Assembly (NCBI GenBank): GCA_001179505.1
Contig: CDMY01000164.1
Span: 62,001 to 126,000 of the forward strand
Direction of reading: 5' to 3'
Source: Vitrella brassicaformis CCMP3155
Taxonomy: Eukaryota; Protista; Chromerida
Length of the DNA: 64,000 nt
Shown: in pieces, positions 23,100 to 28,931 of the stretch
How the letters are laid out: every line of letters starts with the position of its first letter
Position numbering within the stretch: position 1 is the stretch's first letter
Program-made: the position numbers and the translations under genes
Notes under the pieces: model-generated
The model's input: the letters and a program-made list of their open reading frames with translations, nothing else
Database searches by the model: none
What the model was told of the DNA's origin: nothing

Positions 23100-24856
23100 C
23101 TACGCCCCACTGCCCCGGCCCCCAGCCAGCCTCACATAGCAGTCGTCAGCAACGCCTCCCCCCTTCCCCTCTCCCTCCCCCTCCCCTGTGCTGCCTTGAT
23201 GCGTGTGATGATGACCATGCGATGCCACCCCTCGCCCTCCCACGGGCCTCACCTTGCGGACATTCTCCTCATGCCGCCGGTCGCGGGCGCCCCTCGCCTG
23301 TGTCCGGTCGGCTCCACTGGACGGAGCTTGTGGCTGCTGGGCGATGGACACGACTATGACGCCGACGAAGACCAATAGGCTGCCGAAGAGATACATCCAT
23401 GTGAACCTGACACACACACACGTAAGTCAACAAACAGACATACAGACATACAAAGGGGCGTGGCGTGTTGCCGGTGTCAGTGTGGCGTCTTCGCCCGCTT
23501 ACTTGTGTTCTTTGAGTACGATGGCGTCTGCGATGAGAGAGACGGGGATCTGCATGGAAAGGCCCACGGTGGCGATGACGGGCGACAGCAGGATTATGGT
23601 CATCGCCCACAGATAGTCACTCAACACTGTGCCCAGTAGACCTGACACACGGATAGATGGATGGATGGATGGAACACACAGCCTTAGAAGGGTGTGGTGT
23701 GTGCATCTCCCGTCCCTGTCCGCACCGTTGAGCATCAGGAACCCCCATATGCTCCATGACGGCATCCGAAAAGACTCTATGCCCGTCAGGTCTGCAATCA
23801 GCAGCAGGGGAGGACCCACAAGAGCAATCACAATCCCGATGCACCTGCACACACACAACAGACAGACAGACACACACACAGACACACACAGACAGGTGAG
23901 CCACTCCATCAGGGATTTCCACGTCTGCCAATCTCGCCCACCCAAAGAAGAAGCCCATATCGATGTCGCGGTCATCAGGCGCCTGCTTCTTGAGCAGCGT
24001 GGTGAAGAAGGCATAGCACACGGCCGACAGCACGGCCAGACTTTGCCCCCAGAGGGTGCCCTTGATGTGCTCCCCGATGGTCGCCGGCGTGTTGAGCTCG
24101 ATCAGGATGACGCCCACGAAGGACACGCATATGGCGAGGAAGGTGGGCATGTGGAAGCGGTCCCGCAGGATGACCAGGGTCAAGAAGTAAGTGAAGAAGG
24201 ACGACGTCGACGAGAGGACCGTGTTGGTCGCCACGCTCGTGTGAAGGAGGCTCGTGTTGAACGTCAGCTGCGCACCTGATCAATCCATCCATCAGCAAGA
24301 TGCAGAAGAATACAGAGTGCTGCAGGTCGGTGGCCTTGGGTGCGTCGGTCGGCGAGTGGCGGCTTGGCTTACCGAACCAGAGGAGGCCGAGTGGCACCGC
24401 CAGCTGCATGAGTGCCTTCCGCGGGATGGCCTCTGCCACTTCATAAGGCGATCTGCTCTCCTCCTCCTCCTGCAGTATGTCCACCAGCCCCTGACGCACC
24501 AGCCGGTCACGACGCCTCTTGGACAAATACGAACGAACCAAAGACGGACCTGACCACACACAGCACACAGAGAGAGAGAGATGCAACAGAGAGAGAGGTT
24601 TGGCACATCAAATGCCCGGTTTCTCATGCAGCATGAATGCCGCCCTCATCCCATCTCATCTCTCACCGAGGAGCAGGATGGAGAGGACGGTTTGGACGAC
24701 GGTCATAAGGAGGGGTTTCTCGTACTTGACGTCCTCGAATATCTTTTGTATGAGGATGCTGGAGCCCACCCACAGCAGAATGACGCCGCCCAAGATGGTG
24801 AAACCCAACGCACGCCGCGACGCCGCACCAAACGAGCCGAGACCCAGAGTCGCCAT
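23100..24856 (-). CDS. Drug/metabolite (EamA/SLC35F5-like) transporter
   Basis: Multiple TM exons: ILGGVILLWVGSSILIQKIFE..YEKP, TSVATNTVLSSTSSFFT, LAVLSAVCYAFFTTLLKK..DMGFFFG, VLSDYLWAMTIILLSPVIATVGLSMQIPVSLIAD, typical of SLC35F. The 3' end may splice further downstream. Confidence 0.8.
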
Positions 24857-25132
24857 CAGGGAACCAGACGTGGAACCAGCGCTCGTGTGATTATGAATGA
24901 ACCTTCTGCTCTTCTCTGCTGACGAGTTGACACGTGGAGAAGGGAAGAGCACTTGGTGGAGAAAAGATGGTGCTAAAGGGAAAGCTCGCAGAGAGTTACG
25001 TGAAACGCATCGCGACCGGGGTTAAAACATGGATAAAAAGGGCTGAAAGGTGGCGGACGATGCCATCCTGAGTGCCCTGTGACCAACCCACCTGTTTGCC
25101 GGTCCGCATCTGTGTGACATCTGCCGCCCAGC

Positions 25133-28100
25133 ATGGCCAAGAACGAGGGCAGCTCCAAGCGGGATGCGGACGACCTGGTGGAGGACATCTTCATGTCCCT
25201 GCTCTTCGGGGTCATCAGCGCCCTGTCCCTCATCATCGGGGCCTTCATCGGCATCGTGCGCCTGCCGCCCCTCACCGTCCGGGCGGCACTCATGGCATTC
25301 GGTGGCGGCGCCCTCCTCTTCGCCCTCACACTGGAGCTCTTCGGACACGCCGTACACGAGCTCGAGGAACACGAAGTCTTCGGTAGGGGGGGGAGGAAGG
25401 GGAAAGAGGAAGAGCCCCGCGCAAGGCGCGTCCATCCATATGTTTCTTTCCATCCATCTGTGGTGTGGGCAGGTCGGAAGCTCATCGGCACCATGTTTGG
25501 GGCATCGCTTGGCGGCGGTCTTTTTTTCGCGGGTCTGAACCGCATTCTCAACTCGCAGGGTGCGTGGATCCGCAAGCCGGCGCTGGTCAAGGCGTCGTTC
25601 GACAAGATCCGCCGGCTCTTCGCCAGCACCATCGTCAAGCGGCTGCGCAAGATACCCATGTTCCAGGACCTCCCCGACGAGGAGCTCTACAGACTCGTGG
25701 AGGAGATGCAGACTGAACGGTAAGAGGAGATGCAGACTGAACGGTAAGATCATCGACAAGGCGGGGAGGAGCGAAAAGACAGTTTACACATTCCACCCAT
25801 CTGGTCCATCCGTCCATCCGTCCATCCATCTATGTGTGTGCAGTTATCGGAAGGACGACGTGATATTCCACGACCTGGACGAGTACACGTCTCTCTATGT
25901 GGTGGTGACGGGCCAGGTCATGATCGAGCTCAAGGAGGACAGGGCGGCCACACTCGCGGCCGACCCAACCTCCTTCCGCAAACTCAAGGAAGATATCGAT
26001 AAGCACCAGCAGCAGCAGCAGCAGCAGCAGGAGGGGCAGCAGGAGGAGGGCGGGGAGGGAGGTGTGGCTGGGGGTGAGGCGAGCAAGAAATACGAGGTGG
26101 GCAAGAGCCACCGCCGCGCGTCGGTGCGCAAGTCGGAGATCCTGGAGGTGTTCATCGCTGGTCAGTGGTCGGCTGGATGGATGGATCGGAGGGGCGGGGG
26201 ATGGGGGGCATGGATGTCGTATCTGTGTGGCATCTATGTTGTGTCAGGTCCCAACGATTTGTTTGGTGAGATGTCTCTGCTGGCTGGCGTGTCGCTGCGT
26301 GCCGAAGCGACGGCCATGGAGCCGACCAAGGTGCTGCGCATACCTAACTCAGCCATGCACCGACTACTCGCTTCAAGTACACTGCACCCAACCAACACAC
26401 ACAGCATGCCGCATCCACGTCCATCCATCGAACCATCAGGCACGGCGTTGCAGGAGAAGGTAGCGGCAATGGCGATCAAGAACTTCCAGGAGGAAGAGGC
26501 CTTCAAAGACGTACCTGCAGGTCGGGCGGGGGGGTGGGGGCGACACACAGAGGTCCCATGGAGTGTGATGTGTGTATGTTGGTTGTTTGTGTGTGGGGGT
26601 GCAGAGGTGCTGGTTCAGATGACCAACTACATGCACCACGAGGAGATCCCCGCGGGCGAGGTCATCTTCGTCGAAGTCGACCACACCACACCCATCTACT
26701 TCATCGTTTTCGGAGAGGTACACACCTCAATGACAGACAGACAGACAGACAGACAGACAGCAGGCAGCCAGAGAACCAGAGACGGTTGTGAATGTGTGTA
26801 TTGTGTGGTGTGTGGGTGTCAGGTTCAAGTGACGTATGTCGATCAGCGTGTGGACCAATTGGGCTCCCACGACCTCATCGGCCTGGACCACCTACAGACC
26901 GGCAAAACCGTCCAGTAAGCCTCTCTCCTCCCCTCCCCTCACACACACGTTGAGACACGTGTGTGTGTGTCACGTGGGCAGGGCGACGGCGATAGCTACG
27001 GAGCAGACGACGTTGCTGAGGTTGACGCGTGAGGACCTGACGCACATAGTGGAGACGGGCGATAAGGGCAAGGCGCTGCAGCGGGCGCTCGAGAGTGTCC
27101 CCAACAAGGAAATCACCAGACACGAGTCCGTGCGAAAGAGCAAAGTGGTCCCGAGTAAGCAAAGCCAAAGCGAGCCACTCATAAACAACCACCAACACGT
27201 GAACTGTGTGTGTATCGTGGCTACATATCTGCACCAACCGACCGTCGTGTGTCTGAGATAGAGGTGTCGCAGCAGCGTGCCCTGGGGTGGGAGCGCATAC
27301 CGTCCGATGTGGTCAGTCACATCACAGACAGATCTCTGATCCACACACCACACCCACATCCATCCCCGCTCATCTGAATGTCTATCGATGTGTGTGGCCT
27401 GCCTGCCTGCCTGCGTCAGAAACCCGAGGATTTGGAGGGCATGCAGCACGACCAGATCCGGCACATGCTCAGCAAGGCACACGACAGTCAGCTACCTACC
27501 CACCCACACCCGCCCCAGATGTCACTGACCCCTCCCTCCATGTGTGTGTGTGTGTATCAGCATCGAGCCGTAGCGTTCATGAAGGAGACCAAGGACGAGC
27601 AGCAGCAGAAGAAGCTCCGCAAGGGGCGCAGCAGGCTCAGCGTCCTGCTGCCCACCATACCGCAGGAAAAGACCAAGGATTACGTACGTACGCACCGATC
27701 AATGCAATGCACACACAGCCAAGGACAGGACAGGACAGGACAGGCAGGTCAACGGTCGGTCTTTCCAATCTCTCGTCGTCTCACTCAGGAGGAGTTGTTA
27801 GAGGACGACGCCGACCCCGTCGCAGAGGCAATTATCCATCCATCCACACGCACACCCACCCACCCCCCACACCCACCCATCCACCCCTCCCTGTTTGGTT
27901 GCTTTGTCCCCCATTGATTTGGTTGGTGCAGTTGGCCGAGGCCCGTCAGCTGATGATGCAGATCACCGAGGAGGAGGAGGGCCCCACCAGCGCCCGGCTC
28001 GGCCGCGAGATGCTCACCGACATCGCCGCACACGAGGACGTCGAGAAGCCCCACGGCGAGAAGGGCCACGGCCACGGCCATGGAGGGGGCAGCGCGCAGG

Positions 28101-28837
28101 CGGCCGTGATGATATGGCTGGGCATTCTGATCGACGCGGTGCCAGAGTCGCTGGTGATCGGCATTCTGTGGGTCAGCAAGGGGCTGGGGGGCATGCTGCC
28201 CTTCCTCATCGGCGTCTTCCTGTCCAACCTCCCGGAGGCCATGTCCTCCAGCGGCACCATGAGGGTATGTATGCATTGGTCCTGGGGGCACACACACGGC
28301 TCCGTCAGTCAGTGTGTGTGTGTGTGTTTGTAGGCGAGTGGGATGCGTGTGCCGACGATCTACCTGATGTGGACGGGCATAGTGATAGTGACGGGCGTGG
28401 GTGCGGGCATCGGGCCGCCATATTTCCCCCCGGAGACAAAAGCGAGGGAGAAGAGGTCAGTCAGCTCAGCGGAGCGATAGATACCAACTACAATAATGGT
28501 GTGGGTTGGTTGTGTGTGTGTATGTTTGGGGGGCCGCTGTCCGTTTGTCAGTTGGCCATAGGTGCGGTGGAGGGTTTGGCAGCCGGAGCGATGCTGACCA
28601 TGATAGCACAGACCATGCTGCCGGAGGCCTTCGACTAGGCAAGAAAGATCGATGAGACACACTCAGACAGACAGACGCGTGCGTCTCCATGTGTCTGTAT
28701 CTGTGTCTATATCTGTATCTGTGTCTGTGTGTGTGTGTGTGAATGCAATAAATCAGGGCGGCGATGTGGTGGGCCTGTCATGTCTGCTGGGGTTCCTCTC
28801 CGCCCTGGCCGTCAAACTCATACCCATGGACGACTAA
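25133..28837 (+). CDS. ZIP (ZupT/GufA-like) metal transporter containing two cyclic-nucleotide-binding domains
   Basis: TM1-3: SALSLIIGAFIG, ALMAFGGGALLFALTLELF, ASLGGGLFF. CNBD-A: IPMFQDLPDEEL..LYVVVTGQV..LFGEMSLL..RAEA. CNBD-B: FKDVPAEVL..IYFIVFGEV. His-rich PHGEKGHGHGH. TM4-8: LIDAVPESLVIG, FLSNLPEAMSS, EGLAAGAMLTMIAQTMLPEAF. The junctions checked by eye are phase-compatible. Confidence 0.85.
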
Positions 28838-28931
28838 CTAAACCAACTAGTCCACACATATATCGACAGCTTCTGTCCCTACCCTACACCACACCACCCC
28901 GCCCCCCCCCTCCCTCTCTGCGTGGCATCCA

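What the first reader, a model, noticed from the sequence alone, without database searches (positions are those of the whole stretch)
25133..28837. ZIP metal transporter with two cyclic-nucleotide-binding domains in its cytoplasmic loop: candidate cAMP/cGMP-regulated metal permease
Seen: one spliced ORF with ZIP TM1-3, two CNBDs, a helical and His-rich linker (PHGEKGHGHGH), then ZIP TM4-8. CNBD-A keeps a phosphate-binding cassette (FGEMSLL..LRAEA) and carries a poly-Q/Gly-rich insert. CNBD-B is degenerate (LIGLDHLQ..VQATA; no FGE, no Arg). Established: characterised ZIPs have only a short His-rich TM3-TM4 loop and HNxPEG-type metal motifs. Here the motifs are DAVPES and SNLPEA, lacking both His residues. 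Inference: second-messenger-gated transport of a metal or altered substrate. I know of no functional characterisation of this architecture, but similar fusions may exist uncharacterised in bacteria.
Basis: partly seen in the sequence, partly recalled or inferred. Interest (0 to 1): 0.85.

Follow-up and report, generated by a model that had tools for sequence, protein, structure and literature searches.

The report
Frame-broken ZIP transporter with two CNBDs
This Vitrella gene does belong to a real, widespread and untested family of ZIP metal transporters with cyclic-nucleotide-binding domains in their central loop, but this copy carries two frameshifts and a premature stop, so it cannot make the whole transporter.

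Summary
The layout is real. Window 25133-28837 (+) of Vitrella brassicaformis carries ZIP TM1-3, two cNMP-binding domains, a His-rich linker and ZIP TM4-8. Spliced RNA contigs place the CNBD exons and the TM4-TM8 exons on one transcript.

It is not one open reading frame. Compared with a close relative (metagenome contig L001, open from exon 3 to the stop), this copy has:
- a 2-base deletion in exon 11;
- a 1-base deletion in exon 14;
- CAG>TAG at the end of exon 15.

The RNA contig also keeps intron 8. The public annotation (CEL93415.1, 712 aa) stops before TM7-TM8. dN/dS against L001 is 0.19, so the decay is recent.

An intact paralogue (CEM33398.1, 864 aa) sits on one transcript in the same genome. 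This scan had flagged what is almost certainly that locus before (s1-233276). The family occurs in chromerids, dinoflagellates and a haptophyte, and at 563 or more bacterial loci.

The motifs D-x-x-P-E-S and S/A-N-x-P-E replace HNxPEG across the whole family. Many bacterial members keep a canonical FGE...PR[ST]A cassette. No eukaryotic member does: Leu sits at the Arg position of CNBD-A here.

I found no paper and no curated NCBIfam model for the fusion.

The parts
25133..25382 (+). Exon 1: start codon, ZIP TM1-TM2 and the start of TM3. The 5' UTR reaches at least 25023 in RNA.
   Evidence: RNA contig X5 record 13 joins 25023-25381 | 25472-25718 | 25843-25991. Pfam Zip scores 14.6 bits. Translation.
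25473..25719 (+). Exon 2: rest of TM3 and the helix leading into CNBD-A. A 24-nt tandem duplication at 25700-25747 duplicates the splice donor.
   Evidence: Joint 25381>25472 is GT..AG. Repeat found. RNA uses the first donor (25719|25844).
25844..26160 (+). Exon 3: first half of the CNBD-A beta-roll, plus the poly-Q/Gly/acidic insert holding an RRAS motif.
   Evidence: Pfam cNMP_binding scores 20.1 bits. The matching insert in paralogue P0005 (residues 220-305) is disordered in the AF2 model.
26248..26376 (+). Exon 4: CNBD-A phosphate-binding cassette FGEMSLLAGVSLRAEATA.
   Evidence: Pfam cNMP_binding scores 33.3 bits, above the 27.5-bit cut-off. Alignments to PKA-R and CRP place Leu at the Arg position.
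26440..26520 (+). Exon 5: helices between CNBD-A and CNBD-B.
   Evidence: Record coordinates of RNA contig L002 account for exons 5-7 exactly.
26605..26914 (+). Exons 6 and 7 (26605-26717, 26823-26914): CNBD-B beta-roll with the degenerate cassette IGLDHLQTGKTVQATA.
   Evidence: On P0170 the best cNMP_binding stretch is residues 355-434, which is CNBD-B. Glu and Arg are replaced by Leu and Val (sequence).
26982..27154 (+). Exon 8: end of CNBD-B and a long helix.
   Evidence: Joint 26914>26982 is GT..AG. Translation.
27155..27261 (+). Intron 8. It is retained in the assembled RNA contig and has an in-frame TAG at 27259-27261.
   Evidence: L002 covers 26982-27310 without a gap. Against L001 there are 20 gap columns here and none in the two flanking exons (8 and 9). 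The public annotation splices it out.
27262..27486 (+). Exons 9 and 10 (27262-27311, 27420-27486): the conserved 'LGWERIP...' linker element.
   Evidence: Joints 27310>27419 and 27486>27561 appear in X5 and X1. The element aligns to P0005 539-572, which is structured in the AF2 model with pLDDT 80-90.
27561..27683 (+). Exon 11: basic linker (RKGRSRLS). Lesion 1: 2 bases missing between 27571 and 27572 compared with L001, which shifts the frame.
   Evidence: Alignment to L001. The same sequence occurs in RNA of X5 and X1 with 0 gaps. The annotation avoids the shift with an acceptor at 27568 that the listed RNA joints do not show.
27789..27827 (+). Exon 12, followed by a GC-AG intron (27828-27931).
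   Evidence: Joint 27825>27930, 104 nt skipped, in X5 and X1. The GC donor is conserved in L001.
27932..28264 (+). Exon 13: acidic helix, His-rich PHGEKGHGHGH, TM4 (DAVPES) and TM5 (SNLPEA).
   Evidence: Pfam Zip scores 20.2 bits. A phmmer search found 320 relatives.
28334..28455 (+). Exon 14: TM6. Lesion 2: 1 base missing in the G-run 28412-28414. The reading then ends '...AREKSWP*' in exon 15.
   Evidence: Alignment to L001. Joint 28453>28550 skips 96 nt, GT..AG. The same ORF end appears in P0001 (Logan and MMETSP) and in the annotated P0170.
28552..28638 (+). Exon 15: TM7 (LAAGAMLTMIAQTMLPEAFD). Lesion 3: TAG at 28636-28638 where L001 has CAG and the family has a conserved Gln. A GC-AG intron follows (28639-28756).
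   Evidence: The family consensus is 'PEAFEQGGD'. X1 record 5 joins 28636|28755.
28757..28837 (+). Exon 16: TM8 (GGDVVGLSCLLGFLSALAVKLIPMDD) and the TAA stop. The 3' UTR runs to about 28954.
   Evidence: There is 1 synonymous difference from L001.

Best explanation
The locus is a recently decayed but still transcribed paralogue of a genuine gene family. In that family one or two cyclic-nucleotide-binding-type domains are inserted in the cytoplasmic TM3-TM4 loop of a GufA-like ZIP permease.

Shown:
- The domain order and a single transcript.
- Three ORF-breaking lesions (-2 nt, -1 nt, CAG>TAG) and a retained intron in this copy.
- An intact 864-aa paralogue in the same genome.
- A broad bacterial and algal family with its own metal-site motifs.

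Inferred for intact family members:
- The CNBD module sits between the last scaffold helix (TM3) and the first transport-domain helix (TM4) of an elevator-type transporter.
- A change of shape in the CNBD could therefore lock or release the sliding of the transport domain.
- In bacterial members with a canonical FGE...PR[ST]A cassette the trigger is probably cAMP or cGMP.
- In the eukaryotic clade the cassette has lost its Arg, and CNBD-B has also lost its Glu. There the tandem more likely acts as a cNMP-independent or differently liganded regulatory module, possibly tuned by phosphorylation of RRxS sites in the inserts.
- The transport site is reduced to one mostly oxygen-ligand site (Asp, Glu, Ser, Glu), and the second site of BbZIP is dismantled. 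This points to a harder divalent cation than Zn, such as Mn or Fe.

This particular copy most likely makes no working transporter.
For: - Transcript and junctions.
- Lesions against the open orthologue L001.
- The same lesions in DNA contigs (X2, X6), RNA contigs (X5), a second study (X1) and an MMETSP transcript ORF (P0001).
- The public annotation is truncated at 'AREKSWP', with no TM7-8.
- dN/dS is 0.19 overall. Past the 1-nt deletion (codons 540-582, spanning TM7-8) there are 8 synonymous differences to 1 non-synonymous, so the decay is recent.
- The intact paralogue has its whole ORF on one transcript contig. Its Pfam scores are 96.8 bits for cNMP_binding and 48.3 bits for Zip.
- Family survey.
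- Cassette statistics.
- AF2 model with 3+5 TM helices and two confident CNBDs. Foldseek's best hits are the tandem CNB domains of PKA-R and PKG.
- BbZIP residue mapping: with site residues and domain assignment from PMC9873690.
Against: - Logan contigs hide rare isoforms, and 5 further joints were not listed. A minor in-frame splice form around lesion 1 cannot be excluded, for example the annotated acceptor at 27568, exon-10 skipping, or a GC donor at 27477.
- No such rescue is visible for the 1-nt deletion or the TAG.
- L001 comes from a metagenome, and its organism is unknown. It could be a strain, a sister species or an unassembled paralogue. It also carries an odd E>K change in the TM5 motif.
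- Nothing about ligand, substrate or gating has been measured for any family member.
Confidence: 0.8

Rival explanations
1. The gene is intact and functional. Splice variants not seen here, or translational recoding (frameshifting plus TAG read-through), restore a full 8-TM ZIP with two CNBDs.
For: - Frames can be joined on paper with non-canonical junctions.
- The annotation finds an in-frame acceptor 7 nt downstream for lesion 1.
- The TM7-8 codons still look conserved.
- Five joints were not displayed.
Against: - RNA contigs from two studies use the junctions that break the frame.
- The intron 14 junction is a canonical GT-AG and leaves the 1-nt deficit.
- The TAG is present in the mRNA.
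- The two shifts would need slips in opposite directions, plus read-through.
- The orthologue L001 needs none of this.
Confidence: 0.06
2. A shortened product has taken on a new role. Candidates are the annotated 712-aa TM1-6 protein or the roughly 500-aa TM1-3 plus 2xCNBD product of the intron-retaining mRNA. Possible roles are a membrane-anchored sensor or a partner or inhibitor of the intact paralogue.
For: - The locus is transcribed and correctly spliced at most introns.
- The N-terminal half, up to CNBD-B, is an intact ORF.
- ZIPs dimerise through the scaffold domain (PMC9873690).
Against: - The RNA-supported reading runs out of frame from exon 11 onwards.
- TM7-8 belong to the scaffold and dimer domain and would be missing.
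- Conservation of the TM7-8 codons against L001 says the full-length protein was the selected product until recently.
Confidence: 0.1
3. The lesions are sequencing or assembly errors, and the real gene is open.
For: One lesion lies in a short G-run (28412-28414), a typical place for indel errors.
Against: - The window, the DNA contigs (X2, X6), the RNA contigs (X5, X1) and an MMETSP ORF all agree, with 0 gaps and 0 other letters.
- These come from different libraries and studies.
Confidence: 0.03

Closest known systems
Vitrella brassicaformis CEM33398.1 / UniProt A0A0G4GS21 (P0005, 864 aa), the intact paralogue
   Same: It has the same domain order, the same motifs (DGIPES, SNLPEA), the same disordered insert in CNBD-A and the same 'GWER' linker element. 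It is 56% identical and is the sister of the window protein in the tree.
   Different: Its ORF is open and carried whole on one transcript contig. The window copy has two frameshifts, a nonsense codon and a retained intron.
GufA-subfamily ZIP transporters: BbZIP/ZIPB (PDB 5TSA), E. coli ZupT, human ZIP11
   Same: Shared features are the 3+5 TM ZIP fold, the Pro-Glu core of the TM4 and TM5 motifs, and the AAGAM...PE motif of TM7. The phmmer E-value to BbZIP is 5e-5, and the Chromera member is auto-named ZIP11.
   Different: - The TM3-TM4 loop holds 1-2 CNBDs instead of a short His-rich loop.
- H177>D, N178>A/G, Q207>S, D208>N, E240>T and H275-E276>Q-T, so the M2 site and the exit-site ligands are gone.
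- HNxPEG is absent.
Tandem CNB-A/B domains of PKA regulatory subunits and PKG
   Same: These are the best structural matches to the AF2 model (Foldseek E 1e-10 to 1e-11). Both are tandem beta-roll CNBDs, and CNBD-A keeps the FGE helix.
   Different: In this family the domains are embedded in a membrane transporter. The canonical cassette Arg is replaced by a hydrophobic residue in CNBD-A. CNBD-B lacks both Glu and Arg.
Transporters and channels with a CNBD (SLC9C1 sperm Na+/H+ exchanger, HCN/CNG/MloK1) and the ligand-free CNBHD of KCNH channels (from my own knowledge)
   Same: The shared idea is a CNBD-type module that regulates a membrane transport protein. KCNH channels show that a CNBD fold without the Arg can regulate without binding cNMP.
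   Different: In those proteins the CNBD follows the last TM helix at the C-terminus. Here it is inserted mid-protein, between the scaffold and transport domains of an elevator-type carrier.
Bacterial ZIP-CNBD proteins (e.g. Myxococcota MAG L003, Haliangium ochraceum MAG L022, Thiohalocapsa halophila DSM 6210 L082)
   Same: They have the same insertion point and the same TM4 D-x-x-P-E-S and TM5 [SA]-N-x-P-E motifs. All 55 sampled have Pfam cNMP_binding and 48 of 55 have Zip.
   Different: They have one CNBD (about 430-460 aa) or two (about 610-630 aa) and short linkers. Seventeen of 55 have a strict canonical FGE...PR[ST]A cassette. The eukaryotic rows form a separate split in the tree.

Membership tests
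ZIP (Pfam PF02535; GufA subfamily) | Pfam Zip score above the gathering cut-off (35.1 bits) | tested here: inconclusive
   The window pieces score 14.6 and 20.2 bits, and the annotated truncated protein P0170 scores 27.8 bits, all below the cut-off. The intact paralogue scores 48.3 bits, and 40 of 43 relatives match at E <= 0.001.
ZIP (Pfam PF02535; GufA subfamily) | Eight TM helices (3+5) encoded in one reading frame | tested here: not met
   All eight TM segments are recognisable in the DNA. The RNA-supported mRNA breaks the frame in exons 11 and 14 and has a TAG before TM8. The paralogue's AF2 model has the 3+5 helices.
ZIP (Pfam PF02535; GufA subfamily) | HNxPEG motif in TM4, with a related motif in TM5 (PMC8844249) | tested here: not met
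   The motifs here are DAVPES and SNLPEA. This holds family-wide: D is nearly invariant and P-E and N are invariant.
ZIP (Pfam PF02535; GufA subfamily) | Binuclear metal centre residues of BbZIP (M99, H177, N178, E181, Q207, D208, E211, E240) | tested here: not met
   Only E181 and E211 are kept. The rest map to D, A/G, S, N and T (alignment; residue list from PMC9873690).
Cyclic-nucleotide-binding domain (PF00027) | Pfam cNMP_binding score above the cut-off (27.5 bits) | tested here: met
   Exon 4 alone scores 33.3 bits. P0170 scores 95.3 bits with two stretches.
Cyclic-nucleotide-binding domain (PF00027) | Phosphate-binding cassette with Gly-Glu and, nine residues later, Arg followed by Ser/Thr/Ala-Ala | tested here: not met
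   In CNBD-A, FGE is present, but Leu aligns with the Arg and the Arg comes one residue later. In CNBD-B the two positions hold Leu and Val. None of 43 eukaryotic relatives matches the strict pattern, against 17 of 55 bacterial ones.
Cyclic-nucleotide-binding domain (PF00027) | Actual binding of cAMP or cGMP | not testable with these tools
   This needs ITC or fluorescence assays on the isolated domains.
ZIP-CNBD fusion family (unnamed; bacteria, chromerids, dinoflagellates, a haptophyte) | CNBD(s) inserted between TM3 and TM4, plus TM4 D-x-x-P-E-[SA] and TM5 [SA]-N-x-P-E-[AS] | tested here: met
   The window exons carry all of these. In the tree the window protein falls inside the eukaryotic split, as sister to P0005.

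The most novel reading that the evidence does not exclude
The intact relatives may be ligand-gated elevator transporters, which would be a first for the ZIP family. Bacterial members with a canonical cassette would be cAMP- or cGMP-switched carriers of a hard divalent cation such as Mn or Fe, using a single Asp/Glu/Ser/Glu site. The algal clade would have turned the tandem CNBD into a cNMP-independent regulatory clamp, controlled by an intrinsic ligand or by phosphorylation. The window copy is a dying member of that clade.
Probability: 0.35. Interest if true: 0.75.

Novelty: new variant of a known kind. Interest (0 to 1): 0.5.

Why it matters
ZIP transporters are central to zinc, iron and manganese balance, yet how they are switched on and off is poorly understood. 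A ZIP family with a ligand-binding-type domain placed between the fixed and the moving halves of the protein would give a natural system for testing that control. The bacterial members with canonical cassettes are the easiest to test.

For this locus the practical message is a caution. The public protein entry is a truncated product of a decaying gene. Work on Vitrella should use the intact paralogue CEM33398.1 instead.

An earlier scan report described another frame-broken cyclic-nucleotide signalling gene in this genome. I did not test it. Together the two cases hint that this gene set may be turning over in Vitrella.

Tried and rejected
- **My first model.** My first hand-built model gave a 763-aa ORF. 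It used a GC donor at 27477, a non-canonical intron 14 and a non-canonical last intron. The RNA junctions rule these out.
- **Read-through ORF search.** I searched with the read-through ORF 25560-26915 as the protein query and found nothing. Low-complexity words probably caused this, so the blank says nothing.
- **Alternative genetic code or recoding.** I considered this for the TAG and the shifts. I rejected it because the orthologue has CAG there, and because the two shifts would need slips in opposite directions.
- **Assembly error.** Rejected because several read sets agree.
- **Bacterial gene neighbourhoods.** Five loci showed no conserved partner. Two had GGDEF or EAL genes nearby and the rest were unrelated.
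- **Tree building.** The IQ-TREE 'quick' run did not finish, so I used FastTree. The tree has no outgroup, so I claim no direction of transfer between bacteria and algae.
- **Foldseek on the whole 864-aa model.** The 50 best hits shown were all cyclic-nucleotide-binding proteins. The ZIP fold therefore rests on Pfam and on the BbZIP sequence alignment. TM1-3 alone found nothing in the PDB by sequence.
- **Literature and curated families.** Five literature searches found no paper on the fusion. NCBIfam has no dedicated model.
Full report
**What is there**

The window is GC-rich eukaryotic DNA with short introns full of GT/CA and GGATGG repeats. Earlier notes of this scan name the genome as Vitrella brassicaformis. 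The protein look-ups agree: the annotated product of this locus is CEL93415.1 of strain CCMP3155.

Reading the + strand from the ATG at 25133, I found exons that encode the following, in order:
- three TM helices;
- a cNMP-binding domain interrupted by a poly-Q/Gly/acidic insert;
- a second cNMP-binding domain;
- a long charged linker ending in PHGEKGHGHGH;
- five more TM helices, carrying DAVPES (TM4), SNLPEA (TM5) and AAGAMLTMIAQTMLPEA (TM7).

Pfam agrees on the pieces. cNMP_binding scores 33.3 bits on exon 4 alone, and Zip matches weakly on exons 1 and 13. On the annotated protein, cNMP_binding scores 95.3 bits in two stretches and Zip scores 27.8 bits.

**One transcript, but not one ORF**

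Public runs that hold this stretch include one with spliced contigs (X5).
- One contig joins exons 1-3.
- Another, which I retrieved as L002 (Logan ERR558152_19833, 1817 nt), runs from CNBD-A to the 3' UTR.
- L002 is 100% identical to the mRNA I rebuilt from the junctions.
- The gap between the two contigs is the poly-Q repeat.

The junctions, however, do not give a continuous frame.
- Exon 10 ends at 27486 at a GT donor, also seen in a second study, X1.
- Exon 11 starts at 27561, and the ZIP frame is then off by one.
- Intron 14 is a canonical GT-AG (28456-28551), which again leaves the frame off by one. The reading ends '...AREKSWP*'.
- The last intron is GC-AG (28639-28756), and the codon before it is TAG.
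- The contig also keeps intron 8 (27155-27261), which holds a TAG.

**What broke**

A phmmer search of exon 13 against 1.8 billion proteins found a 97%-identical fragment, P0002. Its DNA is on a metagenome contig, L001. L001 aligns to 25837-28919 at about 96% identity in exons and 89% overall. With the same splice sites, including both GC donors, its coding sequence is open from exon 3 to the stop.

Against L001 the window lacks 2 bases in exon 11 (between 27571 and 27572) and 1 base in exon 14 (G-run 28412-28414). It has TAG where L001 has CAG (28636-28638). That Gln is conserved in the family: the consensus reads PEAFEQGGD.

The lesions are not assembly errors.
- DNA contigs (X2, X6) and RNA contigs (X5, X1) lie on them with no gaps or mismatches.
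- The resulting 202-aa ORF, P0001, is also on record from an MMETSP transcript.
- The public annotation, P0170 (712 aa), avoids lesion 1 with an acceptor 7 nt downstream. None of the listed RNA joints shows that acceptor.
- P0170 still ends at 'AREKSWP', without TM7-TM8.

dN/dS between the window and L001 is 0.19. Downstream of the 1-nt deletion (codons 540-582, spanning TM7-TM8) the differences are 8 synonymous to 1 non-synonymous. The full-length protein was therefore under selection until recently. This copy is a young, still-transcribed pseudogene or a truncated remnant.

**The family is real and large**

Many hits are 600-930 aa long, with the ZIP exon matching near their C-terminus.
- Of 43 such proteins, 40 have Pfam Zip and 39 have cNMP_binding.
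- One is CEM33398.1 of Vitrella (P0005, 864 aa). Its gene spans 3422 nt on CDMY01000781.1, and its whole ORF sits on a single transcript contig (L084).
- This is almost certainly the locus another first-stage note flagged (s1-233276, 3431 letters).
- Named sources of other members are Chromera (auto-named ZIP11), Prorocentrum, Ceratium, Biecheleria and the haptophyte Chrysochromulina.

A scan of one genome per bacterial species found at least 563 loci. Their ORFs fall in two size classes, about 430-460 aa with one CNBD and about 610-630 aa with two. All 55 sampled have cNMP_binding and 48 have Zip. Hosts include Myxococcota, Gammaproteobacteria, Bacteroidota, Spirochaetota, Scalindua and others.

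In a FastTree, 40 eukaryotic rows form one well-supported split, with the window as sister to P0005. The bacterial two-CNBD proteins form a clade inside the one-CNBD forms, apart from the eukaryotes. The tree is unrooted, so I infer no direction of transfer.

**Metal site**

The paralogue's TM4-8 aligns to BbZIP with E = 5e-5. Using the residue list of PMC9873690, the mapping is H177>D, N178>A/G, E181 kept, Q207>S, D208>N, E211 kept, E240>T and H275-E276>Q-T.
- D, P-E and N-x-P-E are invariant or nearly so in both the eukaryotic and the bacterial sets.
- The HNxPEG motif that marks GufA-type ZIPs (PMC8844249) is therefore absent by design, not by decay.
- Inference: there is one site made of oxygen ligands, so the substrate is probably a harder cation than Zn.

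**CNBDs**

The AF2 model of P0005 (mean pLDDT 74, pTM 0.64) has confident 3+5 TM helices and two confident beta-roll domains. It also has a disordered insert in CNBD-A, a disordered linker and a small structured element at the conserved 'GWER' motif. Foldseek's best matches are the tandem CNB-A/B domains of PKA-R and PKG.

The cassette itself is not canonical.
- In ungapped HMMER alignments to PKA-R and CRP structures, the window's Leu sits at the Arg position and its Arg is one residue later.
- Across the eukaryotic clade that position is hydrophobic, and the +1 Arg occurs in only a few members.
- CNBD-B lacks both the Glu and the Arg.
- The strict FGE...PR[ST]A pattern is found in 17 of 55 bacterial members and in 0 of 43 eukaryote-like ones.

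**How it most likely works (inferred)**

In BbZIP, TM3 belongs to the static scaffold domain and TM4 to the sliding transport domain. A CNBD module inserted in the loop that links them is well placed to restrain or release the elevator movement.
- In bacteria with canonical cassettes, cAMP or cGMP is the likely trigger.
- In the algal clade, the module more likely works without cNMP or with another ligand.
- RRxS motifs in the CNBD-A insert and in the linker (sequence) suggest control by phosphorylation.
- None of this has been measured.

**Novelty**

The fusion is visible in public databases under automatic names: 'Cyclic nucleotide-binding domain-containing protein', 'zinc transporter ZupT/CRP-like cAMP-binding protein' and 'ZIP11'. 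I found no paper on it in five searches and no dedicated NCBIfam model.

I rate the family as a new variant of known kinds and moderately interesting. The locus itself is a broken copy.

Noticed in passing
window 25700-25747: A perfect 24-nt tandem duplication (GAGGAGATGCAGACTGAACGGTAA twice) spans the exon 2 / intron 2 boundary, so the splice donor exists twice. RNA uses the first copy.
   Followed up: partly
window 27828-27931 and 28639-28756: Two of the 15 introns are GC-AG, with AG|GCAA-type donors. RNA joints confirm both, and both are conserved in the relative L001.
   Followed up: yes
window 27262-27486; P0005 residues 539-572: A short linker element ('QQRALGWERIP...DLEGM.HDQIRHML') is conserved among eukaryotic family members. 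It is predicted to be structured (pLDDT 80-90) in an otherwise disordered linker. Its role is unknown.
   Followed up: partly
window 26100-26135 and 27615-27640: Basic RRxS-type motifs (HRRASVRKS in the CNBD-A insert, RKGRSRLS in the linker) recur at matching places in the paralogue (IRRSES, RRRASW). They may be sites for cyclic-nucleotide-dependent kinases.
   Followed up: no
L001 position ~2390 (TM5 motif): The otherwise open metagenomic relative has SNLPKA, where the family has an invariant Glu (SNLPEA). This is either a sequencing error or a sign that this copy is also under relaxed selection.
   Followed up: no
window 23499-24960 (- strand): The upstream neighbour on the opposite strand looks like an EamA-type transporter gene with introns. 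Its Pfam EamA score is 24.7 bits, below the cut-off.
   Followed up: partly
same genome, other pieces (s1-233243, s1-221636): Earlier scan reports describe other cyclic-nucleotide signalling genes of Vitrella that are frame-broken or have lost catalytic residues. With this locus, that makes several decaying genes of one signalling system.
   Followed up: no
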